Of a stretch of DNA of 64,000 bases, positions 14,321 to 54,600 are shown one piece after another (position 1 is the stretch's first letter; each line of letters starts with the position of its first letter). The notes beneath the pieces were generated by a model. The model did not search any database, was not told where the DNA came from, and saw only the letters and a program-made list of their open reading frames with translations. The translations under genes and the position numbers were made by a program. The DNA lies in NCBI GenBank assembly GCA_964187785.1, contig OZ076415.1, positions 60,760,001 through 60,824,000 on the forward strand. The letters run 5' to 3'. The DNA is from Amphiscolops sp. MND2022 (Eukaryota).

Positions 14321-14732
14321 AAGACGTTACCTTTAGGACTCGAAAAACAGTTTACCAGAAAACGTGAAAAAAACGAAGATTGTGTGTGACAGTTGACATC
14401 ACTCATATTTAATTACCTTATATGCAATGACAGCGTAGTATCTGTCCACTACTTCATAAGCTCAAATGAAAGCTTGACGTATTTTTTACGTATTGCAGAC
14501 ATCTCATAGTTATATCTCTTCAGTATTGCTGGTATACAACAACATTGTGTAAAAAAATTGCTGTTTTTTTTCAAAAAACTCTTCGATAAATTGCTAGTGC
14601 CAAAAACTTTAAGGATCGCAAACGCTTTGTGTTTGCTAAAATGGAAGGAGGACTTCAGTAAAAAAATTCAAATAGTTGCATTATTCTGAAAAACCTAAAG
14701 TGGATCTTTTTGTCTTTCCCCTACCCTTGCAA

Positions 14733-16150
14733 GCAAAAACAAGCCGGTAACGGCCCAAGTCGGCGCCCCGCTAAGGCTCAAAAAATTAATTTTTTTTTAA
14801 AATATGCAAAGTACATTTATATTTAAATTTCATCAAATTTACAGTGCCAAAAATACTTCGAGAGATACGCAAAGGACTCGAAAATCACCTCTTCCCCAAC
14901 TGCAAACAACAAAAAATCTTACCCAACCGAAAACCTGTAACAAAAAATTGAAAAAAATCGAATTTTGAATCAAACCCTAAGGAGGGGCCCCATTGGGGTT
15001 TTTCAACATCCCTTTTGTTGCCAACTATCAAAAAATTGAAAAATGGACCCTTTGGTGACTTCAAAAAATTTTCGAAGAAATCTCACTAAACCGAAACTTT
15101 GATAAAACGTTATATCCGAACTTTGAAAACGTTACGCTCGAACTTTGGAAATGTTAGATTCGAACTTTCAGTGTCAAAAATTTAACACAAAGGCGAAGCC
15201 GTGCTTCGCAAACACTTGCGAACTTTTGAAGAAAACCAAATAAGCAATATCATACGGGGAACCAAGGGTAAAAGGACATTAAAATTCCATCAATTTTACA
15301 GCGCCAAAAAATACCCGAAGGGATACGCATAAGTCTCGAAAACCATTTTTCCCCAACTGAAAGCAGCAAAAAACCCATCTTTGTTAACGAAAAACCTCTA
15401 AAAAACAGAAAACTGAGGGAAAAAATTTTCGGAAATGTTTTTGATGGTCCCCGGTAAGTCGCATAGCGCCGAAAACCTTGATGAGTCCTTAACTCTCGCA
15501 AAACGTTTTGTTTCTGGCAAAAATTGAGGAAGGGCTTCGGTGAAACAAATTTTGAAAAAGTCGCATATAAAATACACCGGTCTTTTTAAAAGAAAATAAA
15601 ATCGGATATAGTGTGCTGGGCCTGAAAAAACCTATTTTAACACGAAAATTATTCCTTTTGAAATCTCACAATGCCGGAAACTGTGAAAGAGGGGGCCCTT
15701 TGAGATTTTTAACATCCATTCTGCTGGAAAATTTCAAAAAATTGAAGGGGGACTCTTTGGAGTCTTTAAAAAACTTTCGAAAAAAAGGAGAAATTTTAAT
15801 GGCAGTCTGATAGTGATGAAAATTCTGAAAAAAGGGACCCTTTGGGATTTTTTAACATTCGTTCTGTTGCAAAATATGCATTCGTTCTTTGGAGACATTA
15901 GAAAAATTTCGAAAAAAAAGTCACAAAGCCAAAAGTCTCAATGCCGAAAGTGAGAACCTTCTGCTTCGGAATACTTGTAAAAAAATTAGCGCATACCCAC
16001 GGGTTCAAACACGAAACCTCTGGGTTGAAAAGCAAGCATCTTACCACTAGACCACGAACGTGTGAAATGTGCAACTTGCCGCATGAAATGAGTTGTCGCG
16101 CGGAAAAAAACCCCGCACTTACCCATAACACTTGCTTATCGCAAGTGTAA
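14733..16150. mobile_element. Modular repeat, copy 2, with a small nested repeat at ~15095-15235
   Basis: Starts aacaagccggtaacggcccaagtcggcg (also at ~19146); same body; hairpin at 16128-16148. Confidence 0.7.
15989..16062 (-). pseudogene. tRNA-derived segment (Glu-like) inside the repeat
   Basis: TGGTCTAGTGGTAAGAT...CTTTTCAACC; degenerate B box. Confidence 0.6.
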
Positions 16151-18118
16151 AAACACTAATATAGTGTAGATCAAATTCTAAGAATCTTTTTCTGTTTTTT
16201 TTTCAAATTGTTCAGTCAAAACGACTAACTCAAGCTCAAAGCCGACCGGGGATGATTCTTTGATGACAGTACTGTTTCGTCAAGCAATTCTAATGACGTT
16301 TTTTGCGTAAATATGTTCAACTACATGGAAGGAAAAACAACCTCGATTGCGTTATTTTCCAAATTTTGTCATGTTCTTGCACAAAACGAGAGATTTGTAG
16401 CATATGAATGCAGACGAGAGACTTGAATGTGTTGCTACTTGAATAATTCAGGGAGTTTTGACCGGTGGTCTTGTCATTACTGGTTTTTTTCTGAGTAAGT
16501 TAAAATGAGATATATTGATTGAACACAAAGTTGAAGTAAAAAGGACGCAAGACTCAAGGCCGAACTTCACAGGAGTGCATCAGCACTTTCTAAGAATACT
16601 GTGAATGACTATTTTGACTAAAAGTATAATTTTCATGTAGTTTCAGATTCAATGTTTGCGTAGCCGGGAAAAAATATATTGGAAATCCGCTCGTTTTTTC
16701 AAACAGCTCAGCTTCTAAAATCTGTCACTTCGTCGGTCAATCTGTCACTTCGTCGGAGAGCACGTTATTTTTAAATTTAAATGATTTTCGAGAGACGTTT
16801 AAGAAATGTGTCAGAAGGTAGGAGTCTTTAGAAATTCTGTAAAAAGTGGAGCTTTCAGTGTGATGTGTGGTTTGGCGAGCGGTTGTCAATCTCGGTGCCT
16901 ATAAAATCTCACAAATATAGTCGAGGTCATAGAATCGAATATAATACAGCCTACACACTTCCATTTGTTTCTCTTTAGAAAGTTTCTTCATTCAAGTTAA
17001 CGAAACATGCAAAATGATTCTCCCTTGAAATTTTCTAGTGATCTTTGAAATATCTGATGAGTTTCCCTATGAGCACATGTGCAACCTCATGGGACCGAAA
17101 AAGCCCAAATCCTTCCGATTTTCAATGTCAATGAGAATTAATGTAACCTTTGAAGAACAGCCCCTGGGCTAATTTGAAGGGCTTCAGCGCAATTAGAGCC
17201 TCAAGGAGGGCACCGCATGCAGCAGTTTTTTACTTTTTTTACATAGATCTTGTTTTGAATACAACCGGTGTTCCACATTGACGCGTAACTGGTACACCTC
17301 TATTCGTACAACCCCGCCAATAATGAATTTTCTCTTTTCGCGGAGCAAATATAAAGCAAAACAAATCAACATCAATTAACAATAAATTATTCTCCAATTT
17401 AAATTATTCATTCTTCAATCTGTTTTTACTCTATTCACAATCAAGTAACACGGCCAGTCTATGATATACATTGTTTACAAGAAAATACTAATTTCAATAG
17501 GAATGATAAAAGGTCGGCAGAAGCTCAGTGGTTGTTTGGAAACAGGAAGATGCTCATTATAGCTCATAATACTACGAGAAAAATCATGAAAACAACAAAA
17601 CTTAGCAAAACAATCATTGGGTGTGAATTCAACTTCTCCAATATGGCGTAGGTGCATGACGACACCATGACGTAATCAGGAAAAACTTGAACAAGTTACA
17701 ACTTATTCCAATGGGTACTTCCGGTTTTTCAGAGATAAGAGTCCAAAGCTCTAAAATCGACATAACATCTAGAAGTTGCAACCCAAATTGCAACTGAAAT
17801 TCGAACGCAGTGAATTTCACAAAAATTGTTTTCGCTACGAGTTGTTAGCTAACTGAGCAATCGAATGAGTCGCCAGAACCTTTTTGAGTCGAGCCAACAA
17901 TCAAATACCATCATCATTGCCACTCTTTTAGCACTAAACAGGGCTCAAAATATTTCGAAGTTTTGAAAAAAAAACGGCACATATAGAAACTGAACCGAAA
18001 AATCGAACTCAAAATCTGCGAAAAAAACTTACTTCTATAATTTAAGACATGCGAGTAATTTCAACAAATTTTGACACAAATAAATACTCTATGAGATACA
18101 GAATAATACATACAAATT

Positions 18119-33600: not shown

Positions 33601-36600
33601 CAGGGTAAGCAGCAGAAGTGGTTGCAGCCCAGAGGTCTCTCCAGCTCACAGCCCCTCTCACACACGTCACAGTCTGCACCTGCCTGTTAACACGTCACAA
33701 TACATCTTCACCAAATATTACATGGAGAGGCATTGAAAACTCATTTCCCCAATATTTGTCATAGAAGTTTCAAATAAACACGAATGTGAACTAGATTGAT
33801 TTCCGAGAAATTTTTATCAAAGGCATTTCTCTTGAATATCAATAGTTTCCGAGATATGGGCAGAGAAAAGAGGTGTTCCAAACATTACTATCAATTAGGG
33901 GTTCCATTCTTTTATCACAGGACTGTTCATCATCTGGGGCAGGCACATACTACCAAACTGCCACAAAATAACTTTGAATCCCATTTCGTGACATTTAACG
34001 ATAGCGTTCAAATTTTTTTGTCTGTAAAGTATCCATCAAAATAGGAACTCCTGGAAAAATCGAATTATACATTTGATTCGGTATATTTGTTTTCTAAACA
34101 GAGATAGAAAAGTCGCCTTATATCACAAAATTAAACCCACTTTGAAAAAGTTCAATAAAACAAGGAGAATTCCAAATTATTGGAATCTTTAACAATAAAA
34201 CAAGAAGTATTCCAATATATTGGAATCTTTGTTTTTGGACATTCTGCAAATTAATAAGAGCCCTATATGAGTTCTTATTGACAATAACTACGGAAGATTT
34301 GTAACATATTGGCTTAAAAAGTATTAAACGTAAAACTGCCCTTGCTTTAGAAATGAAATGCTTTAAAAATTGATGAAATTTCACAAAACTTTTCAATTTT
34401 TGGTACCACTCCTCCTGAACGTATTATATCACTACTAAGACATATTAAACCCTTGGATATAAAAACTAGCTTCATCTTGTTGAAAACTAGCATTGAAAAG
34501 CGGATTTGTCAAAAGATCGGAAGACGCGACGTGATGAGTTTCATTAATCTATTATTATCTTAGTTAGCCCTGAAAACAAATGTTCAGCATTAGAATTTAT
34601 TTGGAAGATTAGTGTGTGATTGCAGGAGCCCCGGGTTATAACCCTTTGTGTATAAGTTCATTGAATGGGTTGACTTGAATGAGAAACGTTCGATCTTTAC
34701 AAAATGGTTTTACAGAATTGTTTTTAGTTTAGAATTACAAGCTGAAATGGTACATTGGAATCGATTTTCTCAAATCCAACAAATTCAATCTGTACCACAA
34801 GCAAACAAGAACCCAACCCCGTATAATGAGGAACTTCAATCAACTTAGAAGATCATCTCATTCAAAAGTCATTATTAGTTTCAAAATATGATATCAAGCG
34901 TTAAAAGACAATAACAGAAAAACATGGGAAACTTACAGTTCTTGAAACCTGAAATTGAAGTCTGAGTTAGTGAAAGAATGACAAGAACTGAAGAACAATA
35001 GGTAACTTATTTTATTGTGCTTACTGGCCTCATGAAGTGAAAGCTCACTAAAAAAGACTAATCTGGTAATCTCTGGTATAGACGATGACGTAAATTGAAA
35101 GAAACGTTAAATGCTCAAAAACTCTATTGCAGACTGATAGTCTCGAAAATAATGCGAAGTTCCCAATGAGTGGAGAGAAACCTCTTCAAAACTTTACAAG
35201 TAGTTCCATTAATTGTAAGACTTTTATAGACTGAAGTTTCGTTAAGTAGTTTTTATCTCAAGAAGTACAAAAACCAATAAGAACGACTCTTATTTTTCAA
35301 CTAGTAGCAATTAGCAGTAGAAAAGATCTCTAACCGTGGACTCGTCGGGCGCAGTGTGGACTACGTGACATATACGTTCACAAGTGTGATTTCCGCATGA
35401 GAGTTGTCTACCACAAGGTACTCCACACGAGTAGGGCTTTCCCTTTGCGCACTGGATGTTGATCGTCTCGTGCTGACCGAAGCAAGAGATCTCCACCTGA
35501 GTTCGACAGGGGGGACATGGCTGCTCCACTTGCTTGAACTGTACACTCTCGTTATTCAGCAATGTCTGAAAGAGCAGACGTCATCAGAGAAATGTACATT
35601 TGAATTGAAAAACTTGGTCTCAAACTGAAATAAGAAAAAAGCGACTTTAAATTCTGCTTGAAAATCAGAGTCAACATGCCAAAGTTGACATACACTGCGC
35701 GAAACGGATGCCAACGAGCAGATGAAAACTGACAGGGAAGACAAAGAATAGGTTGAATGTCAGAACTTCGGTAATGGGCAAGAAAGGATACCAATCAATT
35801 GAATGACAATGTGAAACTGAAGTCAACAAAAAGAACTTCTCAGAACGGTTGTAATCATTGACTGAAGGAGACACAAGGGTTCACCCATTGCTGGGAGGTG
35901 ACTCGAAACAGCCTCGTTCAAACGTAAGCATCACTTGAAAAACAGGCAACAGAGGACACCAACCAAAGAACAGACATTGCGAAACTAACGAAAGGAAACA
36001 AGAACTCAGAACTGTGGTGATCATTGACTAAAGGAGACACCAGGGTTCACCCATTGCCGGGAGGGGACTCGAAACAGCCCCCTTCAAACGTAAGCATCAC
36101 TTGAATAACAGGCAACAGAGGACACCAATCAATGAACAGACATTGCGAAACTAACGAAAGTAAACAAGAACTCCTCAGAACAGTTTTAATCATTGACTGA
36201 AAGAGACACCAGGGTTCACCCATTGCTGGGAGGTGACTCGAAACAGCCTCGTTCAAACGTAAGCATCACTTGAATAACAGTCAACAGAGGACACCAACCA
36301 AAGCGACATTGCGAAACTAACGAAAGTCAACAAGAAGAACTCCTCAGAACAGTTTCAATTAATGACTGAAAGACACACCAGGGTTCAACCATTGCTGGGA
36401 GGTGACTCGAAACAGCCTCGTTCAAACGTAAGCATCACTTGATTAACAGGAAACAGAGGACACCATTCAATGACCATTGCGAAATTAACGAAAGTAAACA
36501 AAAAGAACTTCTCAGAACGGTTGTAATCATTGACTGAAGGAGACACCAGGGTTCACCCATTGCTGGGAGGTGACTCGAAACAGCCTCATTCAAACGTAAG

Positions 36601-39600
36601 CATCACTTGAACAACAGGCAACAGAGGACACCAATCAAAGAACAGACATCGCGAAACTAACGAAAGTAAACAACAACTCCTCAGAACTGTTGTAATCATT
36701 GACTAAAGGAGACACCAGGGTTCACCCATTGCCGGGAGGGGACTCGAAACAGCCTCGTTCAAACGTAAGCATCACTTGAACAACAGGCAACAGAGGACAC
36801 CAACCAAAGAAGAGACATTGCGAAACTAACGAAAGTAAACAAAAATTCCTCAGAACTGTTGTAATCATTGACTGAAGGAGACACCAGGGTTCAACCATTG
36901 CTGGGAGGTGACTCGAAACAGCCTCGTTCAAACGTAAGCATCACTTGATTAACAGGAAACAGAGGACACCATTCAATGACCATTGCGAAATTAACGAAAG
37001 TAAACAAAAAGAACTTCTCAGAACGGTTGTAATCATTGACTGAAGGAGACACCAGGGTTCACCCATTGCTGGGAGGTGACTCGAAACAGCCTCATTCAAA
37101 CGTAAGCATCACTTGAACAACAGGCAACAGAGGACACCAATCAAAGAACAGACATCGCGAAACTAACGAAAGTAAACAACAACTCCTCAGAACTGTTGTA
37201 ATCATTGACTAAAGGAGACACCAGGGTTCACCCATTGCCGGGAGGGGACTCGAAACAGCCTCGTTCAAACGTAAGCATCACTTGAACAACAGGCAACAGA
37301 GGACACCAACCAAAGAAGAGACATTGCGAAACTAACGAAAGTAAACAAAAATTCCTCAGAACTGTTGTAATCATTGACTGAAGGAGACACCAGGGTTCAC
37401 CCATTGCTGGGAGGTGACTCGAAACAGCCTCGTTCAAACGTAAGCATCACTTGATTAACAGAAAACAGAGGACACCAATCGATGACCATTGCGAAATTAA
37501 CGAAAGTAAACAAAAAGAACTTCTCAGAAGGGTTGTACTCATTGACTGAAGGAGACACCAGGGTTCACCCATTGCTGGGAGGTGACTCGAAACAGCCTCG
37601 TTCAAACGTAAGCATCACTTGAAAAACAGGCAATAGAGGACACAAACCAAAGAGAGACATTGCGAAACTAACGAAAGTAAACAAGAAGAACTCCTCAGAA
37701 CAGTTTCAATCATTGACTGAAAGACACACCAGGCTTCACCCATTGCTGGGAGGTGACTTGAAACAGCCTCGTTCAAACGTAAGCATTACTTGATTAACAG
37801 AAAACAGAGGACACCAATCGATGACCATTGCGAAATTAACGAAAGTAAACAAAAAGAACTTCTCAGAAGGGTTGTACTCATTGACTGAAGGAGACACCAG
37901 GGTTCACCCATTGCTGGGAGGTGACTCGAAACAGCCTCGTTCAAACGTAAGCATCACGAACAACAGGCAACAGAGGACACCAACCAAAGAACAGACATTG
38001 CGAAACTAACGAAAGTAAACAAGAACTCCTCAGAACTGTTGTAATCATTGACTGAAAGAAACACCAGGGTTCACCCATTGCTGGGAGGTGACTCGAAACA
38101 CCCTCGTTCAAACGTAAGCATTACTTGATTAACAGGAAACAGAGGACACCAATCGATGACCATTGCGAAATTAACGGAAGTAAACAAAAAGAGCTTCTCA
38201 GAACGGTTGTAATCATTGACTGAAAGAGACACCAGGGTTCACCCATTTCTGGGAGGTGACTCGAAACAGCCTCGTTCAAAAGTAAGCATCACTTGATTAA
38301 CAGGAAACAGAGGACACCAATCAATGACCATTGCGAAATTAACGAAAGTAAACAAAGAGAACTTCTCAGAACGGTTGTAATCATTGACTGAAGGACACAC
38401 CAGGGTTCACCCATTGCTGGGAGGTGACTCGAAACAGCCTCGTTTAAACGTAAGCATCACTTGAATAACAGGCAACAGAGGACACCAACCAAAGAAGAGA
38501 CATTGCGAAACTAACGAAAGTCAACAAAAATTCCTCAGAACTGTTGTAATCATTGACTGAAGGAGACACCAGGGTTCACCCATTGCTGGGAGGTGACTCG
38601 AAACAGCCTCGTTCAAACGTAAGCATCACTTGATTAACAGGAAACAGAGGACATCAATCATTGACCTTTGCGAAAATAACGAAAGTAAACAAAGAGAACT
38701 TCTCAGAACGGTTGTAATCATTGACTGAAAGACACACCAGGGTTCACCCATTGCTGGGAGGTGACTCGAAACAGCCTCGTTCAAACGTAAGCATCACTTG
38801 ATTAACAGGAAACAGAGGACACCAATCGATGACCATTGCGAAACTAACGAAAGTAAACAAGAAGAACTCCTCAGAACAGTTTCAATCATTGACTGAAAGA
38901 CACACCAGGCTTCACCCATTGCTGGGAGGTGACTTGAAACAGCCTCGTTCAAACGTAAGCATCACTTGATTAACAGAAAACAGAGGACACCAATCGATGA
39001 CCATTGCGAAATTAACGAAAGTAAACAAAAAGAACTTCTCAGAAGGGTTGTACTCATTGACTGAAGGAGACACCAGGGTTCACCCATTGCTGGGAGGTGA
39101 CTCGAAAGAGCCTCGTTCAAACGTAAGCATCACGAACAACAGGCAACAGAGGACACCAACCAAAGAACAGACATTGCGAAACTAACGAAAGTAAACAAGA
39201 ACTCCTCAGAACTGTTGTAATCATTGACTGAAAGACACACCAGGGTTCACCCATTGCTGGGAGGTGACTCGAAACACCCTCGTTCAAACGTAAGCATTAC
39301 TTGATTAACAGGAAACAGAGGACACCAATCGATGACCATTGCGAAATTAACGGAAGTAAACAAAAAGAACTCCTCAGAACAGTTTCAATCATTGACTGAA
39401 AGACACACCAGGCTTCACCCATTGCTGGGAGGTGACTTGAAACAGCCTCGTTCAAACGTAAGCATCACTTGATTAACAGAAAACAGAGGACACCAATCGA
39501 TGACCATTGCGAAATTAACGAAAGTAAACAAAAAGAACTTCTCAGAAGGGTTGTACTCATTGACTGAAGGAGACACCAGGGTTCACCCATTGCTGGGAGG

Positions 39601-42600
39601 TGACTCGAAAGAGCCTCGTTCAAACGTAAGCATCACGAACAACAGGCAACAGAGGACACCAACCAAAGAACAGACATTGCGAAACTAACGAAAGTAAACA
39701 AGAACTCCTCAGAACTGTTGTAATCATTGACTGAAAGACACACCAGGGTTCACCCATTGCTGGGAGGTGACTCGAAACACCCTCGTTCAAACGTAAGCAT
39801 TACTTGATTAACAGGAAACAGAGGACACCAATCGATGACCATTGCGAAATTAACGGAAGTAAACAAAAAGAGCTTCTCAGAACGGTTGTAATCATTGACT
39901 GAAGGAGACACCAGGGTTCACCCATTGCTGGGAGGTGACTCGAAGCAGCCTCGTTCAAACGTAAGCATCACTTGATTAACAGGAAACAGAGGACACCAAT
40001 CGATGACCATTGCGAAACTAACGAAAGTAAACAAGAAGAACTCCTCAGAACAGTTTCAATCATTGACTGAAAGACACACCAGGCTTCACCCATTGCTGGG
40101 AGGTGACTTGAAACAGCCTCGTTCAAACGTAAGCATCACTTGATTAACAGAAAACAGAGGACACCAATCGATGACCATTGCGAAATTAACGAAAGTAAAC
40201 AAAAAGAACTTCTCAGAAGGGTTGTACTCATTGACTGAAGGAGACACCAGGGTTCACCCATTGCTGGGAGGTGACTCGAAACAGCCTCGTTCAAACGTAA
40301 GCATCACGAACAACAGGCAACAGAGGACACCAACCAAAGAACAGACATTGCGAAACTAACGAAAGTAAAGAACTCCTCAGAACTGTTGTAATCATTGACT
40401 GAAAGACACACCAGGGTTCACCCATTGCTGGGAGGTGACTCGAAACACCCTCGTTCAAACGTAAGCATTACTTGATTAACAGGAAACAGAGGACACCATT
40501 CGATGACCATTGCGAAATTAACGAAAGTAAACAAAAAGAGCTTCTCAGAACGGTTGTAATCATTGACTGAAGGAGACACCAGGGTTCACCCATTGCTGGG
40601 AGGTGACTCGAAACTGCCTCGTTCAAACGTAAGCATCACTTGATTAACAGGAAACAGAGGACACCAATCAATGACCATTGCGAAATTACCGAAAGTAAAC
40701 AAAGAGAACTTCTCAGAACGGTTGTAATCTATGACTGAAAGACACACCAGGGTTCACCCATTGCTGGGAGGTGACTCGAAACAGCCTCGTTCAAACGTAA
40801 GCATCACTTGAATAACAGGCAACAGAGGACACCAACCAAAGAAGAGACATTGCGAAACTAACGAAAGTAAACAAAAATTCCTCAGAACTGTTGTAATCAT
40901 TGACTGAAGGAGACACCAGGGTTCACCCATTGCTGGGAGGTGACTTGAAACAGCCTCGTTCAAACGTAAGCATCACTTGATTAACAGGAAACAGAGGACA
41001 CCAATCATTGACCTTTGCGAAATTAACGAAAGTAAACAAAGATAACTTCTCAGAACGGTTGTAATCATTGACTGAAAGACACACCAGGGTTCACCCATTG
41101 CTGGGAGGTGACTCGAAACAGCCTCGTTCAAACGTAAGCATCACTTGATTAACAGGAAACAGAGGACACCAATCGATGACCATTGCGAAATTAACGAAAG
41201 TAAACAAAAAGAACTTCTCAGAAGGGTTGTACTCATTGACTGAAGGAGACACCAGGGTTCACCCATTGCTGGGAGGTGACTCGAAACAGCCTCGTTCAAA
41301 CGTAAGCATCACGAACAACAGGCAACAGAGGACACCAACCAAAGAACAGACATTGCGAAACTAACGAAAGTAAACAAGAACTCCTCAGAACTGTTGTAAT
41401 CATTGACTGAAAGACACACCAGGGTTCACCCATTGCTGGGAGGTGACTCGAAACACCCTCGTTCAAACGTACGCATTACTTGATTAACAGGAAACAGAGG
41501 ACACCAATCGATGACCATTGCGAAATTAACGAAAGTAAACAAAAAGAGCTTCTCAGAACGGTTGTAATCATTGACTGAAGGAGACACCAGGGTTCACCCA
41601 TTGCTGGGAGGTGACTCGAAACTGCCTCGTTCAAACGTAAGCATCACTTGATTAACAGGAAACAGAGGACACCAATCATTGACCTTTGCGAAATTAACGA
41701 AAGTAAACAAAGAACTTCTCAGAACGGTTGTAATCATTGACTGAAAGACACACCAGGGTTCATCCATTGCTGGGAGGTGACTCGAAACAGCCTCGTTCAA
41801 ACGTAAGCATCACTTGATTAACAGGAAACAGAGGACACCGATCGATGACCATTGCGAAACTAACGAAAGTAAACAAGAAGAACTCCTCAGAACAGTTTCA
41901 ATCATTGACTGAAAGACACACCAGGCTTCACCCATTGCTGGGAGGTGACTTGAAACAGCCTCGTTCAAACGTAAGCATCACTTGATTAACAGAAAACAGA
42001 GGACACCAATCGATGACCATTGCGAAATTAACGAAAGTAAACAAAAAGAACTTCTCAGAAGGGTTGTACTCATTGACTGAAGGAGACACCAGGGTTCACC
42101 CATTGCTGGGAGGTGACTCGAAACAGCCTCGTTCAAACGTAAGCATCACGAACAACAGGCAACAGAGGACACCAACCAAAGAACAGACATTGCGAAACTA
42201 ACGAAAGTAAACAAGAACTCCTCAGAACTGTTGTAATCATTGACTGAAAGACACACCAGGGTTCACCCATTGCTGGGAGGTGACTCGAAACACGCTCGTT
42301 CAAACGTAAGCATTACTTGATTAACAGGAAACAGAGGACACCAATCGATGACCATTGCGAAATTAACGAAAGTAAACAAAAAGAGCTTCTCAGAACGGTT
42401 GTAATCATTGACTGAAGGAGACACCAGGGTTCACCCATTGCTGGGAGGTGACTCGAAACAGCCTCGTTCAAACGTAAGCATCACTTGATTAACAGGAAAC
42501 AGAGGACACCAATCAATGACCATTGCGAAATTAACGAAAGTAAACAAAGAGAACTTCTCAGAACGGTTGTAATCATTGACTGAAAGACACACCAGGGTTC

Positions 42601-45600
42601 ACCCATTGCTGGGAGGTGACTCGAAACAGCCTCGTTCAAACGTAAGCATCACTTGAATAACAGGCAACAGAGGACACCAACCAAAGAAGACATTGCGAAA
42701 CTAACGAAAGTAAACAAGAACTCCTCAGAACTGTTGTAATCATTGACTGAAGGAGACACCAGGGTTCACCCATTGTTGGGAGGTGACTCAAAACAGCCTC
42801 GTTCAAACGTAAGCATCACTTGATTAACAGGAAACAGAGGACACCAATCGATGACCATTGCGAAATTAACGAAAGTTAACAAAAAAAACTTCTCAGAACG
42901 GTTGTAATCATTGACTGAAGGAGACACAAGTGTTCACCCATTGCTGGGAGGTGACTCGAAACAGCCTCGTTCAAACGTAAGCATCACGAACAACAGGCAA
43001 CAGAGGACACCAACCAAAGAACAGACATTGCGAAACTAACGAAAGTAAACAAGAACTCCTCAGAACTGTTGTAATCATTGACTGAAAGACACACCAGGGT
43101 TCACCCATTGCTGGGAGGTGACTCGAAACACCCGCGTTCAAACGTAAGCATTACTTGATTAACAGGAAACAGAGGACACCAATCGATGACCATTGCGAAA
43201 TTAACAAAAGTAAACAAAAAGAACTTCTCAGAACGGTTGTAATCATTGACTGAAGGAGACACCAGGGGTCACCCATTGCTGGGAGGTGACTCGAAACAGC
43301 CTCGTTCAAACGTAAGCATCACTTGATTAACAGGAAACAGAGGACACCAATCATTGACCTTTGCGAAATTAACGAAAGTAAACAAAGAGAACTTCTCAGA
43401 ACGGTTGTAATCATTGACTGAAAGACACACCAGGGTTCACCCATTGCTGGGAGGTGACTCGAAACAGCCTCGTTCAAACGTAAGCATCACTTGATTAACA
43501 GGAAACAGAGGACACCAATCGATGACCATTGCGAAATAAACGAAAATTAGCAAAAAGAACTTCTCAGAACGGTTGTATTTATTGACCGAAGGAGACACCA
43601 GGGTTCACCTATTGCTGGGAGGTGACTAGAAACAGCCTCGTTCAAACGGAAGCATCACTTGAATAACAGGCAACAGAGGACACCAACCAAAGAAGAGATT
43701 GCGAAACTAACGAGAGTAAACAAGAACTCCTCAGAACTGTTGTAATCATTGACTGAAGGAGACACCCGGGTTTACCCATTGCTGGGAGGTGACTCAAAAC
43801 AGCCTCGTTCAAACGTAAGCATCACTTGATTAACAGGAAACAGAGGACACCAATCGATGACCATTGCGAAATTAACGAAAGTTAACAAAAAGAACTTCTC
43901 AGAACGGTTGTAATCATTGACTGAAGGAGACACAAGGGTTCACCCATTGCTGGGAGGTGACTCGAAACAGCCTCGTTCAAACGTAAGCATCACTTGAATA
44001 AGAGGAAACAGAGGACACCAATCATTGACCTTTGCGAAATTAACGAAAGTAAACAAAGAGAACTTCTCAGAACGGTTGTAATCATTGACTGAAAGACACA
44101 CCAGGGTTCACCCATTGCTGGGAGGTGACTCGAAACAGCCTCGTTCAAACGTAAGCATCACTTGATTAACAGGAAACAGAGGACACCAATCGATGACCAT
44201 TGCGAAATTAACGAAAATTAGCAAAAAGAACTTCTCAGAACGGTTGTATTCATTGACTGAAGGAGACACCAGGGTTCACCTATTGCTGGGAGGTGACTCG
44301 AAACAGCCTCGTTCAAACGGAAGCATCACTTGAATAACAGGCAACAGAGGACACCAACCAAAGAGATTGCGAAACTAACGAAAGTAAACAAGAACTCCTC
44401 AGAACTGTTGTAATCATTGACTGAAGGAGACACCCGGGTTTACCCATTGCTGGGAGGTGACTCAAAACAGCCTCGTTCAAACGTAAGCATCACTTGATTA
44501 ACAGGAAACAGAGGACACCAATCGATGACCATTGCGAAATTAACGAAAGTTAACAAAAAGAACTTATCAGAACGGTTGTAATCATTGACTGAAGGAGACA
44601 CAAGGGTTCACCCATTGCTGGGAGGTGACTCGAAACAGCCTCGTTCAAACGTAAGCATCACTTGAATAACAGGCAACAGAGGACACCAACCAAAGAAGAG
44701 ACATTGCGAAACTAACGAAAGTAAACAAGAACTCCTCAGAACTGTTGTAGTCATTGACTGAAGGAGACACCAGGGTTCACCCATTGCTGGGAGGTGGCTC
44801 AAAACAGCCTCGTTCAAACGTAAGCATCACTTGATTAACAGGAAACAGAGGACACCAATCAATGACCATTGCGAAATTAACGAAAGTTAACAAAAAGAAC
44901 TTCTCAGAACGGTTGTAATCATTGACTGAAGGAGACACCAGGGTTCACCCATTGCTGGGAGGTGACTCAAAACAGCCTCGTTCAAACGTAAGCATAACTT
45001 GAATAACAGGCAACAGAGGACACCAACCAGAGAAGAGACATTGCGAAACTAATGAAAGTAAACAAGAACTCCTCAGAACTGTTGTAATCATTGACTGAAG
45101 GAGACACCAGGGTTCACCCATTGCTGGGAGGTGACTCAAAACAGCCTCGTTCAAACGTAAGCATCACTCGATTAACAGGAAACAGGACACCAATCAATGA
45201 CCATTGCGAAATTAACGTAAGTAAACAAAAAGAACTTCTCAGAACGGTTGTAATCATTGACTGAAAGACACACCAGGGTTCACCCATTGCTGGGAGGTGA
45301 CTCGAAACACCCTCGTTCAAACGTAAGCATTACTTGATTAACAGGAAACAGGACATCAATCGATGACCATTGCGAAATTAACGAAAATTAGCAAAAAGAA
45401 CTTCTCAGAACGGTTGTAATCATTGACTGAAAGACACACCAGGGTTCACCCATTGCTGGGAGGTGACTCAAAACAGCCTCGTTCAAACGTAAGCATAACT
45501 TGAATAACAGGCAACAGAGGACACCAACCAGAGAAGAGACATTGCGAAACTAATGAAAGTAAACAAGAACTCCTCAGAACTGTTGTAATCATTGACTGAA

Positions 45601-48600
45601 GGAGACACCAGGGTTCACCCATTGCTGGGAGGTGACTCAAAACAGCCTCGTTCAAACGTAAGCATCACTCGATTAACAGGAAACAGGACACCAATCAATG
45701 ACCATTGCGAAACTAACGAAAGTAAACAAGAACTCCTCAGAACTGTTGTAGTCATTGACTGAAGGAGACACCAGGGTTCACCCATTGCTGGGAGGTGGCT
45801 CAAAACAGCCTCGTTCAAACGTAAGCATCACTTGATTAACAGGAAACAGAGGACACCAATCAATGACCATTGCGAAATTAACGAAAGTTAACAAAAAGAA
45901 CTTCTCAGAACGGTTGTAATCATTGACTGAAGGAGACACCAGGGTTCACCCATTGCTGGGAGGTGACTCAAAACAGCCTCGTTCAAACGTAAGCATAACT
46001 TGAATAACAGGCAACAGAGGACACCAACCAGAGAAGAGACATTGCGAAACTAATGAAAGTAAACAAGAACTCCTCAGAACTGTTGTAATCATTGACTGAA
46101 GGAGACACCAGGGTTCACCCATTGCTGGGAGGTGACTCAAAACAGCCTCGTTCAAACGTAAGCATCACTCGATTAACAGGAAACAGGACACCAATCAATG
46201 ACCATTGCGAAATTAACGTAAGTAAACAAAAAGAACTTCTCAGAACGGTTGTAATCATTGACTGAAAGACACACCAGGGTTCACCCATTGCTGGGAGGTG
46301 ACTCGAAACACCCTCGTTCAAACGTAAGCATTACTTGATTAACAGGAAACAGGACATCAATCGATGACCATTGCGAAATTAACGAAAATTAGCAAAAAGA
46401 ACTTCTCAGAACGGTTGTAATCATTGACTGAAAGACACACCAGGGTTCACCCATTGCTGGGAGGTGACTCAAAACAGCCTCGTTCAAACGTAAGCATAAC
46501 TTGAATAACAGGCAACAGAGGACACCAACCAGAGAAGAGACATTGCGAAACTAATGAAAGTAAACAAGAACTCCTCAGAACTGTTGTAATCATTGACTGA
46601 AGGAGACACCAGGGTTCACCCAGTGCTGGGAGGTGACTCAAAACAGCCTCGTTCAAACGCAAGCATCACTTGATTAACAGGAAACAGGACACCAATCAAT
46701 GACCATTGCGAAATTAACGTAAGTAAACAAAAAGAACTTCTCAGAACGGTTGTAATCATTGACTGAAAGACACACCAGGGTTCACCCATTGCTGGGAGGT
46801 GACTCGAAACACCCTCGTTCAAACGTAAGCATTACTTGATTAACAGGAAACAGGACATCAATCGATGACCATTGCGAAATTAACGAAAATTAGCAAAAAG
46901 AACTTCTCAGAACGGTTGTATTCATTGACTGAAGGAGACACCAGGGTTCACCCATTGCTGGGAGGTGACTCGAAACAGCCTCGTTCAAACGGAAGCATCA
47001 CTTGAATAACAGGCAACAGAGGACACCAACCAAAGAAGAGATTGCGAAACTAACGAAAGTAAACAAGAACTCCTCAGAACTGTTGTAATCATTGACTGAA
47101 GGAGACACCAGGGTTTACCCATTGCTGGGAGGTGACTCAAAACAGCCTCGTTCAAACGTAAGCATCACTTGATTAACAGGAAACAGAGGACACCAATCAA
47201 TGACCATTGCGAAATTAACGAAAGTAAACAAAGAGAACTTCTCAGAACGGTTGTAATCATTGACTGAAAGACACACCAGGGTTCACCCATTGCTGGGAGG
47301 TGACTCGAAACAGCCTCGTTCAAACGTAAGCATCACTTGAATAACAGGCAACAGAGGACACCAACCAGAGAAGAGACATTGCGAAACTAATGAAAGTAAA
47401 CAAGAACTCCTCAGAACTGTTGTAATCATTGACTGAAGGAGACACCAGAGTTCACCCATTGCTGGGAGGTGACTCAAAACAGCCTCGTTGAAACGTAAGC
47501 ATCACTTGATTAACAGGAAACAGGACACCAATCAATGACCATTGCGAAATTAACGAAAGTAAACAAAAAGAACTTCTCAGAACGGTTGTAATCATTGACT
47601 GAAAGACACACCAGGGTTCACCCATTGCTGGGAGGTGACTCGAAACACCCTCGATCAAACGTAAGCATTACTTGATTAACAGGAAACAGAGGACACCAAT
47701 CGATGACCATTGCGAAATTAACGAAAATTAGCATAAGAACTTCTCAGAACGGTTGTAATCATTGACTGAAGGAGACACAAGGGTTCACCCATTGCTGGGA
47801 GGTGACTCGAAACAGCCTCGTTCAAACGTAAGCATCACTTGAATAACAGGCAACAGAGGACAGCAACCAAAGAAGAGACATTGCGAAACTAACGAAAGTA
47901 AACAAGAACTCCCAGAACTGTTGTAATCATTGACTGAAGGAGACACCAGGGTTCACCCATTGCTGGGAGGTGGCTCAAAACAGCCTCGTTCAAACGTAAG
48001 CATCACTTGATTAACAGGAAACAGAGGACACCAATCAATGACCATTGCGAAATTAACGAAAGTTAACAAAAAGAACTTTTCAGAACGGTTGTAATCATTG
48101 ACTGAAGGAGACACCAGGGTTCACCCATTGCTGGGAGGTGACTCGAAACAGCCTCGTTCAAACGTAAGCATACCTTGAATAACAGGCAACAGAGGACACC
48201 AACCAGAGAAGAGACATTGCGAAACTAATGAAAGTAAACAAGAACTCCTCAGAACTGTTGTAATCATTGACTGAAGGAGACACCAGGGTTCACCCATTGC
48301 TGGGAGGTGACTCAAAACAGCCTCGTTCAAACGTAAGCATCACTTGATTAACAGGAAACAGGACACCAATCAATGACCATTGCGAAATTAACGAAAGTAA
48401 ACAAAAAGAACTTCTCAGAACGGTTGTAATCATTGACTGAAAGACACACCAGGGTTCACCCATTGCTGGGAGGTGACTCGAAACACCCTCGTTCAAACGT
48501 AAGCATTACTTGATTAACAGGAAACAGAGGATACCAATCGATGACCATTGCGAAATTAACGAAAGTAAACAAAAAGAACTTCTCAGAACGGTTGTAATCA

Positions 48601-51600
48601 TTGACTGAAGGAGACACCAAGGTTCACCCATTGCCGGGAGGGGACTCGAAACAGCCCCGTTCAAACGTAAGCATCTCTTGAATAACAGGCAACAGAGGGC
48701 ACTAATCAATGAACAGACATTGCGAAACACGAAAGGAAACAAGAAGAACTCATCAGAACGATTGTAATCATTGACTGAATGAGACACCAGGGTTCACCCA
48801 TTGCTGGAACGTGACTCGAAACAGCCTCGTTCAGATAACTTGAATAAAAGGCAACACAATACTTAAATCAATGGACAGACATTGCGAAACTAACGCATTG
48901 CGAAAAGACATTTGAAACTTTTCTGAACGTTTGTAATCATTGACTGAATGAGACACCAGGGTTCAATCGTCAACAACACACAAGACAGTTATGAATACTA
49001 TCAATAAGGTACGCAAACGCGAGGGATTGTCCCAAAGGTACGAATCGGAGAAAAGACTAGTGACTTCAAGGGCAAAAAATTACAATAAATACACGTGAAT
49101 GGTAACGCATTTCGAGCTAATCAATGCATGTTAAGAGGTGAAGTTGCAACGTTCTAAATTACAAACAATGCATATATGTTATTTACTTATTCGTCAATCG
49201 CCTTAAACTTTGCATACTCTGTGATTGGCCTAGAAACAAACCTTTGGTTTTATCTTTGTCCATACCGCGGAGTGACACTTAGCGAGACATTTGTGTCCAC
49301 ATTTATCGATGATCATCTCGCACACTTTGTCACAGGGTGGGCAGTAGCCAGAATGGCATTTATGGGGCTTGGCAGTCGGGTGATGACACGAAGGAGGCCT
49401 CCTGTGAATCAAAACACATCAGTCACTTTGGAGCAAAATATCTCCATAGTAAACGTTGAAATCAAATATTCAAATATTTTTTCGTAGCCTTGTTGAAACA
49501 AGGGACACCTCAGGACATTTTTGCTCAAAAATTTGCTCAAAAATTGATAATCGTAGTTGAAAATGCTGTTCACATCCTAGAATTCAAGTTATGAGATTTC
49601 AAATGAAGTTCAAAATGCTTCACGACCGTAACATTATCAGATGAAGTTTTTAATAGCAGCTTTCGGTGAAAAGCTTCGGTGGGGATGCCTGGCTTCAAAC
49701 GTACGTGCCAAAATTGGCTGTTTTTAGGAAAAAAACTCACGTACTTCAGTTGTGGATCGTTAATTGAATTTGGTCAAACGACAACATTCGAATGAGTTCA
49801 AACAACGGTCACAGTTTCACATAGAAAAACCCGGTGAAGCACTTTGTCAGTGCTTTGAGTAAAAGCTACTATTGGCTGCTAATACATGCAGAAAAATATA
49901 CAATTACTTGTCTAGAGTATTTATATTTTAAAAAAATTCGGGGGAAAATTTCTTCAGGGGTCAATAGGTCAGGTTAGAGATGATATCTCACATGCAGCTC
50001 TTCTGGCAGTTGGGTCTTTTGACGACCTTTTCGCGGCCACATGGCACTTCTATGGAGGTGGCTCCACACGGACAGGACAGTACCTTGGTCTGCTGACAGG
50101 GGTAGCAGGGTCCAGCGTGGCATCTCTGCTGGCACCGGTGGTTGGCACATGGCAAGTTCTTCAGACACACTTGATCGCACGGTGCACAGTCCCCCACACA
50201 ACACTTCTTCTTACACTGAAACACATCCACATTAATCGTGGTTGGCTTTCATTTGGATTGAAATTATTGATTGAAAACCACAAGGCAAAAAACCAATTAT
50301 TCAACGATAAATTGAGTAATTTCATCTCAGAGCAAGTTTTTGGATGTTTCGGTTCCGAGTCGGTTTATAGTCTTCGATATAGCTTGGTTGGAGGTGCTGA
50401 AAACGCGCTCCAATTGTCTTCAGTTCGGAGGAAAAGGCAATCGGCTGGACAATAGAGATGAATGGAGATTGGGACATCTCCCACAGAAATTCAGCGGACA
50501 AAAATAATGAGGGAAAAGCTTTTGAAAAAACGAGAAAATCGGCTGCATCTCTAATTCTAATTGTTTTTCGAAAAACTTTTGCAGAAAGCCGGGAAACGAT
50601 TTCCTAACAGTAGCAAATTTCTTCAACATATTTTTATGTTGACAAAAACTGCTATTTCAAAATACTCATTCAGGAAATTTTTTTCGGTTGTTTGAAAAAC
50701 ATTGCCAGCACTCATGATTGTCGTCGACGCAGTTTGAATTACATGTACCTGATGTCTGCCACAGTTGCGATAGTTGCCACATTTCAGATCGCAAGTGAAG
50801 TTTTGGGAGCACTGGATGAGTCTGGTTTTCCTAGTGCAGGGACACTGCTTCCTCACTGGCTCCTTACAGGAACCACAGTCCCCCGAGTGACACCTCTCGC
50901 TGCAGAAGTGGTCCCCACAGGCCAGCAGTTTGCCACACTCATTGTCACACGTGGCAGCAACGTCGGTGCACTCCAGTCTGGAGTAGGTCACTGAGCCACA
51001 GGGACACGTTCTATTGGCAAGCAGGGGTCACCCTTTATATTACAATACCAATATATTGCAACTCATCAGCGATTGCGCTATTAATAACTAACTCCGATAG
51101 TTTAGAAAATAGCTAAAGCAACAAATTTTGTGCTTCGTTCTCAGTCGATGACACTGTCATAGTCAAAATCACTCAGCAATGTCACTATTCAGATCTTGAG
51201 TAAATCAACTGTATACAAGCATAGTAGGACAAACATTGTTTCTACCATTTTTATGCATCAAAATGAAGTTTCCTCCAAGCGCGGGTACAAAACGTCTTCA
51301 CCACTTGAAAATGAAACGTTTCTCTACAGTTTCAGTACAAATTAAATACCTTGGAAGGATTGAATTGCTTTCATTTTTGTGTTCAAAAATGGCATTGGCT
51401 ACTGACTGGCAAAACAAAAACCAGCGTTTAATGGAGTTACACCAGTGACTACAAGTAGGGGAACCCTGCCTATTGCCGCTATTGGGGCACTGGCCACAAC
51501 CATCGGGCGAGGACACGTGGCAGGTAGCTTTGCATGTATGCTGGCCACAATCGAACAACTTGCCACACACAGTCTCACACTTCCATTGGACACTGGAGCA

Positions 51601-54600
51601 CAACGTGAGTCTCTCCTTGGCCCCACACTCGCACTTCTCAACAGCTGTTAGTTTGCACTGACCGCAGTCTCCTGGGTGACACAGGTCGGCACAATAGTGT
51701 TTGCCACAGTTGAGTAGTTTGCCACACTTGTTACTGCACATCCAGATCTGCGCACTGCAGCGCCTCGGAACTGGACTCGAGGAGCCGCATTGGCATTTGA
51801 CCTGTACCAGTGAATTGTAAACTACATACAATAAGTAGACGGAAGAGGAAAATTGGAAAAAAAGTTTTTGATGGAGGTCTCCCGTAAGCCGCATAGTGAT
51901 GAAAACCATCAGGCGTCCTTTATGCTCGCAAAACGTTTCGTTACTAGTAAAAATTGCTTCGATGAAAACAAATCAGAAAAGTCGCATAGAAAAAACGCCG
52001 GTCTTAAAAAACAAAATTCAGATATTTTGAAAATCTCAATGCTGAAAACTGTAAAAAAGGGAAAATTTTCAAAACAAAAATTAGAATTTTGAGAAGTCTC
52101 AGTGCTGAAAAATCGGAAAGAGGGGACCCTTCGGGATTTTTGAACAACCATTCTATTGCAAAATATCAAAAAATTGAAGGGGCCCTCTGGGGACATTAAA
52201 AAATTTCGGGGGAAAATCTCACAAGGCCGAAGAAAGGGGAAGTCTCACAGTGCCGAAAACAGTGCGAAAGGGGACCCTTCTGCTGTGGAATGCTTGTAAA
52301 AAAATATTGGCGCATACGCACCGGTTTGAACACGAAACTTCTGGGTTGAAAAGCAGGCATCTTACCACTAGACCATGAACGCCTAAACTGCGACTTGCCG
52401 ACTGAAACGAGTTGTCGCGCGGAAAAAAGCATCCGCACTTTCCCATAACACTTGCTTATTGCAAGTGTAATAAATCCTAGATTCGATTTTTGATTGAACA
52501 GAAACGCTGCTCTTAACTCGAAATTTTCAAAAAACATGTCGAATTTCAAACACTACTCATCAAATGAGGATAGATTTGGTACAATTCACTGACCTGCACT
52601 GTCTGGGGGCAAGGAGGACAGGGTCCGGGATGGCACAGAAGGGTGCATCGATGGCCACAGGGTTCATGGTCACTGGGTGAGATGAGAGGCTTGTCGCACG
52701 ATTGGCCACAAGCGTGGGGCACAAGCCAAGGATCGAACTCGGGATCACAGGTTTTGCCACAGAAACAAAAGTAGTATTCGGGAATGGAATCAACGGAGTA
52801 CTCGTATCGGCACTTAGGGCTACAACAAAAGATTCAAACAATGATATCAAATGAAAACCAAGAGTCAAAAATTTTTGACTCGAACGTTATATAAAAGGAT
52901 TATATCAGAAAAGTCAAAAGATCGGTTTTTCAGCTTTAGCACAGGTCAAATTAAAAATGCCGGTAAGTCCACTACCTACCAGATGACATTGCGATACAAG
53001 ATGTGACTACTAACCAATCCCATGTGAGGTTCGTAGAATGCATGTCATGTCGCGATGTGTCGCCATGTGCTTCTAAACGCATCTTGGTTTGCTCAATACT
53101 GTCTCTGGCCCACTTCTGAATACACTGCAAGTGGTACATGCAAGAACACCTCTCACAACTCCACACAGGCTGCGTTCTCTTCACCGAGGAGATGCAGATC
53201 AGACAAGACACTGCTCCACTTTGACACACTTCCAGCAGCAACTTCGAGATCCTCCCGGCATCCTCGGTTGTACCTAACATTTCAAATTAAAGTTATTTTC
53301 CGACCCCACATTTTATAAATGGGGGAGGAGAATCATGATCTGTGATGCGTTTTTTTTCCAAATTCTGCCAAAAGTCCACTTGACTATCCATCCACTTGAC
53401 GACTATCTCCTCTATCGCTAAGAAGGGGAGAAGCTAGCTTAGAAGGGGAATATTATCTAAAGTTAAAAAGGGAATAAGATCTCAAAGGAATAAGATCTAA
53501 AATCACTGAATTTTAGATCTTATTCTTTAGATCCTATTCCCCCTCCCAAAAAAGCTATGGCTTAGTCGGTGAAGGCGAAAAGGGCGGAAAATATCCCGGT
53601 GCTTAGCGGGCGTCTTGTTGGTAATAGTCACGAAAATAATACAAAAGAGATGCAACAAATGATCTCAAGGCCCGAAAATTAGCCTCTAATTACACTTCAT
53701 ATCACGTCTTTGTTTTCATTGTTCTTGCCTGAACTTCGAGGCATTTAATTTGGCATAAATTTCGACCACCCCATCAGAGTAACCGTGTAATATTCTACTT
53801 GTTAGAAACTGAGCAGTGTTTTTCGTAGTGATTTAACTTCATGAGCTTAGTATTTGAAAAAAGTAGAAAAAGACTTGAATGACATTTTAGTCTCAGATAG
53901 TTCAGTAAAAAGATAGCCCCGGAAAGTTATTTTCATCAAATTAAAATGTAAAACCTTTTCCGAATAATCTTGAAGAAAGTATTATAAATATACTTTGATC
54001 GGTCGTTCATTACATGGTTACTATAACATGATCGCGATTACCTGTTCGGAATGATTGAGATTGTATCGACTTACTTTCTGACTCATACTTTTCGAAAGTA
54101 GCGCTTATGATGCTTTGATAATGGGACCCATTTTCCGAATCATCGTCTTCATCATCGTCTGATGACTGGTACTCGATGACAGAGGGGTTGACATGAGTGC
54201 CTCGGTTGTTGTTATTGGAACCTCTTTTGACATTGATCACTTCCTCCGTAGACTCAGTTGACCCAGCCGGTGACACTTGTGATGGCGAAGGAGAGTTGGA
54301 ATTGTTGTCATCACAGCCTACATCAGTCGTTATTCCATATCCAGAACCCACCTCTGTCAATAGATAGGACTGCCCTCCTCGACCACTGCTGTGAGCCCCA
54401 ACACCGTTATTCGACATATGAGCTCGCATTGGGGAGCTCACGGTATATTCAACATAAGTGGGAGGCGGGTAGAAACTCATCTGAGTCGGGTGATTCGAAG
54501 CATGTCCAGAGGAGTATACATAGTCGCCGTATGGAGCAACAGTTTGAATTGGCATCATTGGACTGTACACTCTGAAATCCCCGCCTGTAAAAAGCACCAC

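What the first reader, a model, noticed from the sequence alone, without database searches (positions are those of the whole stretch)
51800..52599. NFXL1 intron 4 is an introner: TIR element plus one TSD copy, with both splice sites supplied by the TSD
Seen: on the gene strand the junctions read GTGCAG|GT-CAGTGAATTGTA ... TACAATTCACTG-GTACAG|GT. The 784-bp element has perfect 12-bp TIRs starting CAGTG and sits between 8-bp repeats GT(G/A)CAGGT. The intron is 792 bp (784+8), so splicing removes the element plus one TSD and restores the frame exactly. Known: 8-bp TSDs are the hAT signature, and DNA-transposon-derived introner elements create introns this way. Inferred: this is a lineage-specific intron gain; without the nested repeat (51850-52470) the founder was only ~170 bp.
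Basis: partly seen in the sequence, partly recalled or inferred. Interest (0 to 1): 0.85.

Follow-up and report, generated by a model that had tools for sequence, protein, structure and literature searches.

The report
Transposon insertion turned new intron
In an acoel worm's NFXL1 zinc-finger gene, a small cut-and-paste-type mobile element landed in an exon at a spot whose duplicated 8 letters supply GT and AG splice signals. It is most likely removed as a newly gained intron, a known but rarely documented route of intron birth in animals.

Summary
Window 51802-52593 (minus strand) is a 792-nt GT..AG, phase-0 interruption of an NFXL1-like gene. It consists of a 784-bp element with perfect 12-bp inverted ends plus one copy of a 7/8-matching 8-bp flanking repeat. 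Removing it restores the conserved reading frame.

The gain is supported. A related acoel contig (L011, 90% amino-acid identity) has one uninterrupted exon with an empty target site. The intron is also absent in Symsagittifera and in six non-acoel animals.

- Convolutriloba macropyga has a canonical intron at exactly the same position and phase, without inverted ends. On the gene tree this is best read as a parallel gain.
- No other copy of the founder (about 169 bp once an abundant nested repeat at 51860-52474 is removed) was found in the window or in four DNA runs at 80% likeness or more. A proliferating "introner" family is therefore not shown, and the hAT assignment rests only on TSD length and the CAGTG ends.

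No RNA data exist to prove splicing.

The scan has noted similar transposon-derived introns elsewhere in this genome; I did not test those notes.

Verdict: a new member of a known kind, namely a transposon-derived intron.

The parts
52594..52819 (-). Exon D of the NFXL1-like gene; it ends ...CCC CAG ACA GTG CAG
   Evidence: tblastn to S. roscoffensis NFXL1-like; gene model; Pfam zf-NF-X1
52592..52599 (-). Upstream copy of the 8-bp target-site duplication (gene strand GTGCAG|GT). Its last two bases are the GT donor.
   Evidence: the empty site in relative L011 reads GTGCAAGC
51802..52593 (-). Predicted intron 4: 792 nt, GT..AG, phase 0. It equals the element plus one TSD copy.
   Evidence: it sits at a point where the L011 and S. 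roscoffensis exons are continuous
52580..52591 (-). Terminal inverted repeat, 5' arm in gene orientation (CAGTGAATTGTA). Its first four bases form positions +3 to +6 of the donor site.
   Evidence: I6, 12/12
52475..52579 (-). Unique internal part of the founder element (single-copy depth)
   Evidence: read laying depth equals the flanks; no blastn hit elsewhere
51860..52474 (-). Nested, very abundant interspersed repeat (SINE-like, with A-box and B-box-like motifs on the minus strand judged by eye). It is a secondary insertion into the founder.
   Evidence: summed contig depth 1e4-1e5 against 20-110 in the flanks, from thousands of contigs; copies at 13554-14321 and 15433-16153; not called as tRNA by ARAGORN or Rfam
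51820..51859 (-). Unique internal part of the founder element, 3' side in gene orientation
51808..51819 (-). Terminal inverted repeat, 3' arm in gene orientation (TACAATTCACTG on the gene strand)
   Evidence: I6
51800..51807 (-). Downstream copy of the target-site duplication (gene strand GTACAG|GT). Bases 5-6 are the AG acceptor. It has one G-to-A difference from the upstream copy.
   Evidence: L011 bases 2997-3001 align to both sides of the intron
51470..51801 (-). Exon E of the NFXL1-like gene; it starts GTC AAA TGC (VKC...)
   Evidence: Pfam zf-NF-X1

Best explanation
A small non-autonomous cut-and-paste DNA element of about 169 bp, with 12-bp perfect terminal inverted repeats beginning CAGTG, inserted into a formerly continuous exon of the NFXL1-like gene. 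This happened in the window species' lineage after it split from the species of contig L011. Integration duplicated the 8-bp target GTGCAGGT, which contains AG|GT. The upstream copy therefore offers GT, extended to GTCAGT by the first TIR bases. The downstream copy offers AG. Splicing from one to the other removes the element plus one target copy and restores the original codons Val-Gln|Val. Later an abundant SINE-like repeat inserted inside the element and lengthened the intron to 792 nt. Shown: the anatomy, the frame restoration, the empty orthologous site, presence of the insertion in all four DNA runs including a differing contig that looks like a second haplotype, and the nested repeat. 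Inferred: that transposition by a hAT-like transposase was the mechanism, and that the intron is actually spliced at these sites.
For: TIR 12/12 abutting a 7/8 8-bp direct repeat. This is the only such TIR+TSD pair in 64 kb, with 0 of 100 simulations producing one. Terminal repeats in 6 other window introns and 14 ortholog introns are 6 nt or shorter. Exact frame restoration, and stops on read-through. Relative L011 (90% amino-acid identity, sister to the window in the gene tree) has one continuous exon across the site, reading GTGCAAGC. Its bases 2997-3001 align to both intron flanks. The intron is absent in S. roscoffensis (278-aa exon) and in Glandiceps, Littorina, Mytilus, Branchiostoma, Actinia and Oscarella. 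These last six instead share a phase-1 intron 11 codons upstream. Contigs of four DNA runs carry both junctions; one X4 contig differs at 15 positions from the window, consistent with a second haplotype, with no change in the TIR or TSD. Flanking exons are under strong purifying selection (dN 0.05, dS saturated). Introners that take both splice sites from the insertion site are described in PMC9860276.
Against: No RNA-seq run could be found, so splicing is unproven. No second copy of the founder or its TIR was found in the window, the fetched loci, or four DNA runs at 80% likeness or more, which is unusual for a transposon family. Five of the 8 TSD letters are splice consensus. C. macropyga has an intron at the identical site, so shared ancestry has to be argued away by parsimony (2 steps against 3). 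No transposase partner is known, and the hAT target consensus nTnnnnAn is only half met.
Confidence: 0.75

Rival explanations
1. This is a new intron created by error-prone repair of a staggered double-strand break, as proposed for Daphnia neointrons. Unique filler DNA was captured, the 8-bp direct repeat came from fill-in of the staggered ends, and the inverted ends are chance or a by-product such as a hairpin. No transposon was involved.
For: The founder arms are single copy in four DNA runs. The adjacent intron 5 is also lineage-specific, single copy and flanked by a 7/8 8-bp repeat. A parallel gain at the same site occurred in C. macropyga. Daphnia neointrons show 4-12-bp exon-derived direct repeats and frequent parallel gains (PMC4202315).
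Against: A perfect 12-bp inverted repeat that starts exactly where each direct-repeat copy ends is not predicted by break repair. It was reached in 0 of 300 shuffles and in none of 20 control introns. An 8-bp duplication plus CAGTG ends is the classic hAT pattern (established knowledge, not tested here).
Confidence: 0.12
2. The intron is ancestral to these acoels. It is retained in the window species and in C. macropyga and was lost in S. roscoffensis and in the L011 species. The inverted ends are chance or a selected stem that brings the splice sites together.
For: Identical position and phase in C. macropyga. The ends form a 13-bp closing stem in the predicted fold. Acoels clearly lose introns, since both lack the metazoan phase-1 intron 11 codons upstream.
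Against: It needs 3 events against 2 on the tree ((window, L011), (S. ros, C. mac)). No outgroup has the intron. The element fills the intron from +3 to -7 and the flanks duplicate exon sequence, which fits insertion into an intronless site. The C. macropyga intron ends show no similarity and no TIR. A stem covering +3 to +14 of the donor would be expected to hinder U1/U6 pairing (established knowledge).
Confidence: 0.06
3. The insertion is not spliced, or not spliced precisely. It disrupts the gene, giving a pseudogene or a truncated isoform.
For: There is no transcript evidence of any kind. The 3' splice region has a weak pyrimidine tract.
Against: All downstream exons are intact and conserved through at least exon I. 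dN is much lower than dS against L011. The insertion is present in all four runs, including a differing contig that looks like a second haplotype. The donor CAG|GTCAGT is as good as those of the other introns of the gene. The geometry restores the frame exactly.
Confidence: 0.06

Closest known systems
Introners / introner-like elements (MITE-type, e.g. Micromonas, Aureococcus, Symbiodinium; the Florenciella type takes both splice sites from the insertion site): PMC9860276, PMC11282704
   Same: A short non-autonomous element with TIRs and a TSD. The intron equals the element plus one TSD copy, the splice dinucleotides are recruited from the duplicated target, and the mRNA length is unchanged. 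The intron is absent from orthologs.
   Different: Introners are defined as families with many near-identical intron copies, and only one copy was found here. The host is a bilaterian animal (an acoel); a full-text search for introner plus acoel returned only one paper, a Copia retrotransposon survey I did not open, with one mention of each word.
hAT-superfamily non-autonomous elements (Ac/Ds-like MITEs)
   Same: An 8-bp target duplication, and a TIR beginning CAGTG, which fits the YARNG start typical of hAT ends (from established knowledge).
   Different: No transposase partner and no family members were identified. The target matches the nTnnnnAn consensus at only one of its two positions.
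Daphnia pulex neointrons (staggered-break repair): PMC4202315
   Same: A recent lineage-specific intron, a short direct repeat of exon sequence at the far end of the intron, unique intron sequence, and a parallel gain at a homologous site.
   Different: Here perfect terminal inverted repeats abut the direct repeats, which points to transposase-mediated integration.
MITE-derived non-canonical introns of the tunicate Fritillaria borealis (Henriet et al. 2019, as cited in PMC11282704; the MITE origin is from my own recollection of that paper, the passage read covers only the non-canonical borders)
   Same: An animal genome in which transposon insertions became introns.
   Different: Those introns mostly have non-GT/AG borders and form families. 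This one is GT-AG and solitary.

Membership tests
Introner family (proliferating intron-generating transposon) | Many similar copies in the genome, a large share of them forming introns in unrelated genes | tested here: not met
   No second copy of the 117-bp or 52-bp founder arms at 80% likeness or more in Logan contigs of four DNA runs: depth over the arms equals the single-copy flanks. None in the 64-kb window or in 11 loci. Limits: more diverged copies, or copies sharing only the TIR, would be missed, and the full assembly could not be searched.
Introner family (proliferating intron-generating transposon) | TIRs and/or a TSD located at the intron boundaries | tested here: met
   12/12 TIR at +3 and -7; 7/8 8-bp flank repeat
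Introner family (proliferating intron-generating transposon) | Splicing removes the element plus one TSD copy so that the coding sequence is restored | tested here: inconclusive
   Met in silico: the frame and the conserved residues are restored. No RNA run is available to show the junction.
Introner family (proliferating intron-generating transposon) | The intron position is new, that is, absent in close relatives | tested here: met
   Absent in L011, S. roscoffensis and 6 outgroups. The same-site intron in C. macropyga is judged independent.
hAT superfamily (non-autonomous member) | 8-bp target-site duplication | tested here: met
   GTGCAGGT / GTACAGGT, and an empty site in L011 that overlaps both flanks
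hAT superfamily (non-autonomous member) | Short TIRs beginning YARNG | tested here: met
   CAGTG.... The consensus itself comes from established knowledge, not from a tool.
hAT superfamily (non-autonomous member) | Target consensus nTnnnnAn | tested here: inconclusive
   Read on either strand, only one of the two consensus positions is met.
hAT superfamily (non-autonomous member) | An autonomous partner encoding a hAT (BED/DDE/dimerisation) transposase with matching ends | not testable with these tools
   The rest of the genome cannot be searched by DNA here. Earlier scan notes mention hAT elements in this genome, but I did not test them.
Break-repair neointron (Daphnia type) | A direct repeat of terminal exon bases at the opposite intron end, and non-repetitive filler | tested here: met
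   However, this model does not explain the perfect TIRs.

The most novel reading that the evidence does not exclude
This acoel lineage is, or recently was, in a phase of genome-wide intron gain driven by hAT-like TIR elements that insert at 8-bp targets containing AG|GT. That would make it a bilaterian introner system. Two neighbouring introns of one gene were gained since the split from L011, and the same protosplice site was hit independently in another acoel, Convolutriloba.
Probability: 0.3. Interest if true: 0.8.

Novelty: new member of a known kind. Interest (0 to 1): 0.55.

Why it matters
How animals acquire new spliceosomal introns is a long-standing question, and cases where the mechanism can still be read from the sequence are rare. 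This locus preserves an unusually full record. It has an empty orthologous site, a target duplication that supplies both splice dinucleotides, intact inverted ends and a later nested repeat. A second lineage-specific intron lies 330 bp away, and another acoel has an independent intron at the identical site. If the pattern is genome-wide, as other untested notes of this scan suggest, acoels would offer an animal model for transposon-driven intron gain and for recurrent use of protosplice sites.

Tried and rejected
- RNA evidence: two run searches returned only four runs of one study. These runs hold intronic words and lay as continuous exon-intron contigs, so they are DNA, and no splice junction could be tested.
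- Family search: the TIR 12-mer with up to 2 mismatches in the window was at chance level. blastn-short of the founder arms against the window and 11 loci gave only 10-14-mers. A recurrent 11-mer in C. macropyga turned out to be an internal part of an unrelated Convolutriloba repeat. A look-up by sequence in the scan's notes was blank.
- A tRNA origin for the nested repeat is not confirmed: ARAGORN and Rfam found nothing.
- The full C. macropyga gene locus could not be fetched because the gene range is 144 kb. The two intron ends came from two contigs (L010, L008), so the intron's length and interior are unknown.
- Searches for further close relatives found only L011.
- Chance origin of the TIR was considered and rejected.
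- A transposon inserting into a pre-existing intron was rejected, because the element fills the intron from +3 to -7 and the flank repeat includes exon bases.

Full report
**Observation.** The + strand reads ACCTGTAC-CAGTGAATTGTA at 51800-51819 and TACAATTCACTG-ACCTGCAC at 52580-52599. The repeat finder reports the two 12-nt arms as 100% complementary (pair I6). On the minus strand this gives GTGCAG|GT-CAGTG...CACTG-GTACAG|GT. The interval 51802-52593 is 792 nt, begins GT and ends AG. Joining 52594 to 51801 gives ...CPPCPQTVQ|[11 protein letters not shown]... in one frame (phase 0). Read-through meets a stop after about 15 codons. Both flanking exons hit Pfam zf-NF-X1 above the gathering score.

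**Gene and organism.**
- A search with exon E found an NFXL1-like protein of the acoel Symsagittifera roscoffensis as the best named relative. A second acoel ortholog is from Convolutriloba macropyga.
- tblastn of the S. roscoffensis protein on the window lays out a minus-strand gene from about 55.9 kb to at least 32.5 kb.
- I modelled exons B-I with canonical junctions. The interruption is the fourth coding intron.
- The window protein is 62% identical to each of the two acoel proteins, which are 71% identical to each other.

**Nested repeat.**
- blastn and alignment show that 51860-52474 is a copy of a repeat also present at 13554-14321 and 15433-16153.
- I laid contigs of four DNA runs of the same organism on 50900-53100 at 80% likeness or more. 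Summed depth was 1e4-1e5 over that stretch against 20-110 in the flanks.
- The remaining arms of the element (51808-51859 and 52475-52591) have flank-level, single-copy depth.
- The founder was therefore about 169 bp, and the original intron about 177 nt.
- The repeat has A-box and B-box-like motifs by eye, but neither ARAGORN nor Rfam calls a tRNA.

**Is the end structure more than chance?**
- In the whole window, 33 perfect 12-nt inverted pairs lie within 50-3000 bp of each other. Only this pair has an 8-bp flank repeat matching at 7/8 or better, and none of 100 Markov simulations produced one.
- Among the seven modelled introns of this gene, only this one has a terminal inverted repeat above 6 nt, and 0 of 300 end-shuffles reach 12.
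- Fourteen introns of the two acoel orthologs have best values of 3-6 nt.
- I discount the flank repeat itself, because CAGGT is expected at any consensus donor and acceptor. Only the outer GT(G/A) is locus-specific.

**Intron positions in orthologs.** I mapped exact exon chains for seven orthologs on their own loci and projected the introns on a protein alignment.
- The phase-2 intron in the Cys of CPKC is shared by all species that cover the site.
- Six non-acoel animals (hemichordate, gastropod, bivalve, amphioxus, anemone, sponge) share a phase-1 intron at CHPG|PCPPC, 11 codons upstream of the window's intron 4. None has an intron at the window's site.
- S. roscoffensis has a single 278-codon exon across this whole region.

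**Nearest relative.** A search with the window's read-through ORF found one close homolog on an ENA contig (locus L011).
- It is 90% identical in amino acids over exons D-F. Synonymous sites are saturated and dN is 0.05. Its introns are unalignable with the window's.
- In a maximum-likelihood tree it is sister to the window sequence: ((window, L011), (Symsagittifera, Convolutriloba)), with the acoel clade at 100/100.
- L011 keeps the other introns but has one continuous exon across both the intron 4 and intron 5 sites.
- Its empty site reads ACA GTG CAA GCC (GTGCAAGC), against GTGCAGGT and GTACAGGT in the window.
- In blastn, L011 bases 2997-3001 align to both sides of intron 4, which is the footprint of a target duplication.

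**A complication.** In C. macropyga the annotated protein reads ...CAQTVM|VRCQCG.... Genomic contigs show ATG|GTAAGC at the end of the upstream exon (L010) and TTTTAAG|GTC at the start of the downstream exon (L008). That is a canonical phase-0 intron at exactly the window's site.
- It is longer than 2.9 kb and shows no inverted ends and no similarity to the window's intron.
- On the tree the presence pattern (window +, L011 -, Symsagittifera -, Convolutriloba +, outgroups -) needs two gains, or one gain plus two losses.
- Together with the duplicated exon bases in the window, which require an intronless site at the time of insertion, I read this as a parallel gain at a protosplice site (xxG|GTC).
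- Frequent parallel gains are documented in Daphnia (PMC4202315).

**Mechanism.**
- The target GTGCAGGT contains AG|GT. After duplication, the upstream copy ends in GT, extended by the first TIR bases to GTCAGT. The downstream copy contains AG.
- Splicing between them removes the element plus one target copy and restores Val-Gln|Val.
- This is the architecture described for introners that recruit both splice sites from the insertion site (PMC9860276).
- The 8-bp duplication and CAGTG ends fit hAT elements (established knowledge), but no partner or family member was available to test.
- All four runs carry both junctions. One X4 contig covering the 5' junction differs from the window at 15 of 657 positions, which looks like a second haplotype, and none of the listed differences lies in the TIR or TSD. 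The insertion is therefore not a private artefact of the assembly.
- The ends pair as a 13-bp closing stem in the predicted fold. I treat that as a consequence of the TIRs, not as a function.

**What is not shown.**
- No RNA run was available, so splicing is inferred from conservation and geometry.
- No other copy of the founder was found, so a proliferating introner family is not demonstrated and break-repair capture of unique DNA remains a rival.
- Earlier notes of this scan report similar hAT-derived introns elsewhere in this genome. These are untested leads that raise the prior for a genome-wide process but are not evidence here.

**Verdict.** This is a well-supported, lineage-specific intron gain that carries the footprint of a TIR-element insertion. 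It is a new member of a known kind, not a demonstrated introner family.

Noticed in passing
window 51011-51469 (minus strand): The next intron (intron 5, GC..AG, phase 2 in the Arg of SGNR|TCPCG) is also absent in L011, S. roscoffensis and all outgroups. It is flanked by a 7/8 8-bp repeat (GGCAATAG / GCCAATAG). It has imperfect inverted ends, GCAGGGTTC-CCCT against GCAGGGGTCACCCT, offset 10 nt from the acceptor. Its depth is single copy.
   Followed up: partly
L010:17329/17330 and L008:9802/9803 (Convolutriloba macropyga): There is a canonical intron at exactly the same codon boundary and phase as window intron 4, without TIRs. It is apparently a parallel gain. C. macropyga also has extra introns after codons 169 and 289 that S. 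roscoffensis lacks.
   Followed up: partly
window 35820-48833: A 13-kb tandem satellite (168-bp unit, 335-bp higher-order period, about 78 copies, 88-90% matches) fills most of the 13.7-kb intron between exons H and I of the same gene.
   Followed up: partly
window 13554-14321, 15433-16153, 51860-52474: A very abundant interspersed repeat of about 615-770 bp, with summed contig depth 1e5 in four DNA runs. It has internal GGGGACCCTT-type sub-repeats and a tRNA-like stretch with A-box and B-box-like motifs that tRNA finders do not call.
   Followed up: partly
alignment; window 50749/50215, L001 intron after codon 596: The three acoel genes mapped at this point (window, L011, S. roscoffensis) have a phase-0 intron at CGRH(Q/P)|CKKKCC, whereas the non-acoel animals have a phase-0 intron four codons downstream (KRKC|CD). 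This is either intron sliding or a loss plus a gain.
   Followed up: no
L008:9788-10207 and 13658-14077; L009:13450-18385: In C. macropyga the exon homologous to window exon E is tandemly duplicated with a 3870-bp period. A tandem array with a period of about 990 bp lies in an upstream intron. The annotated gene spans 144 kb.
   Followed up: no
window intron 5 donor; L001 intron after codon 725; L008:~10205: GC donors turn up repeatedly in these acoel NFXL1 genes (AG|GCAGGG, AAG|GCTAGT, AG|GCATGT), which suggests a raised GC-AG frequency in acoels.
   Followed up: no
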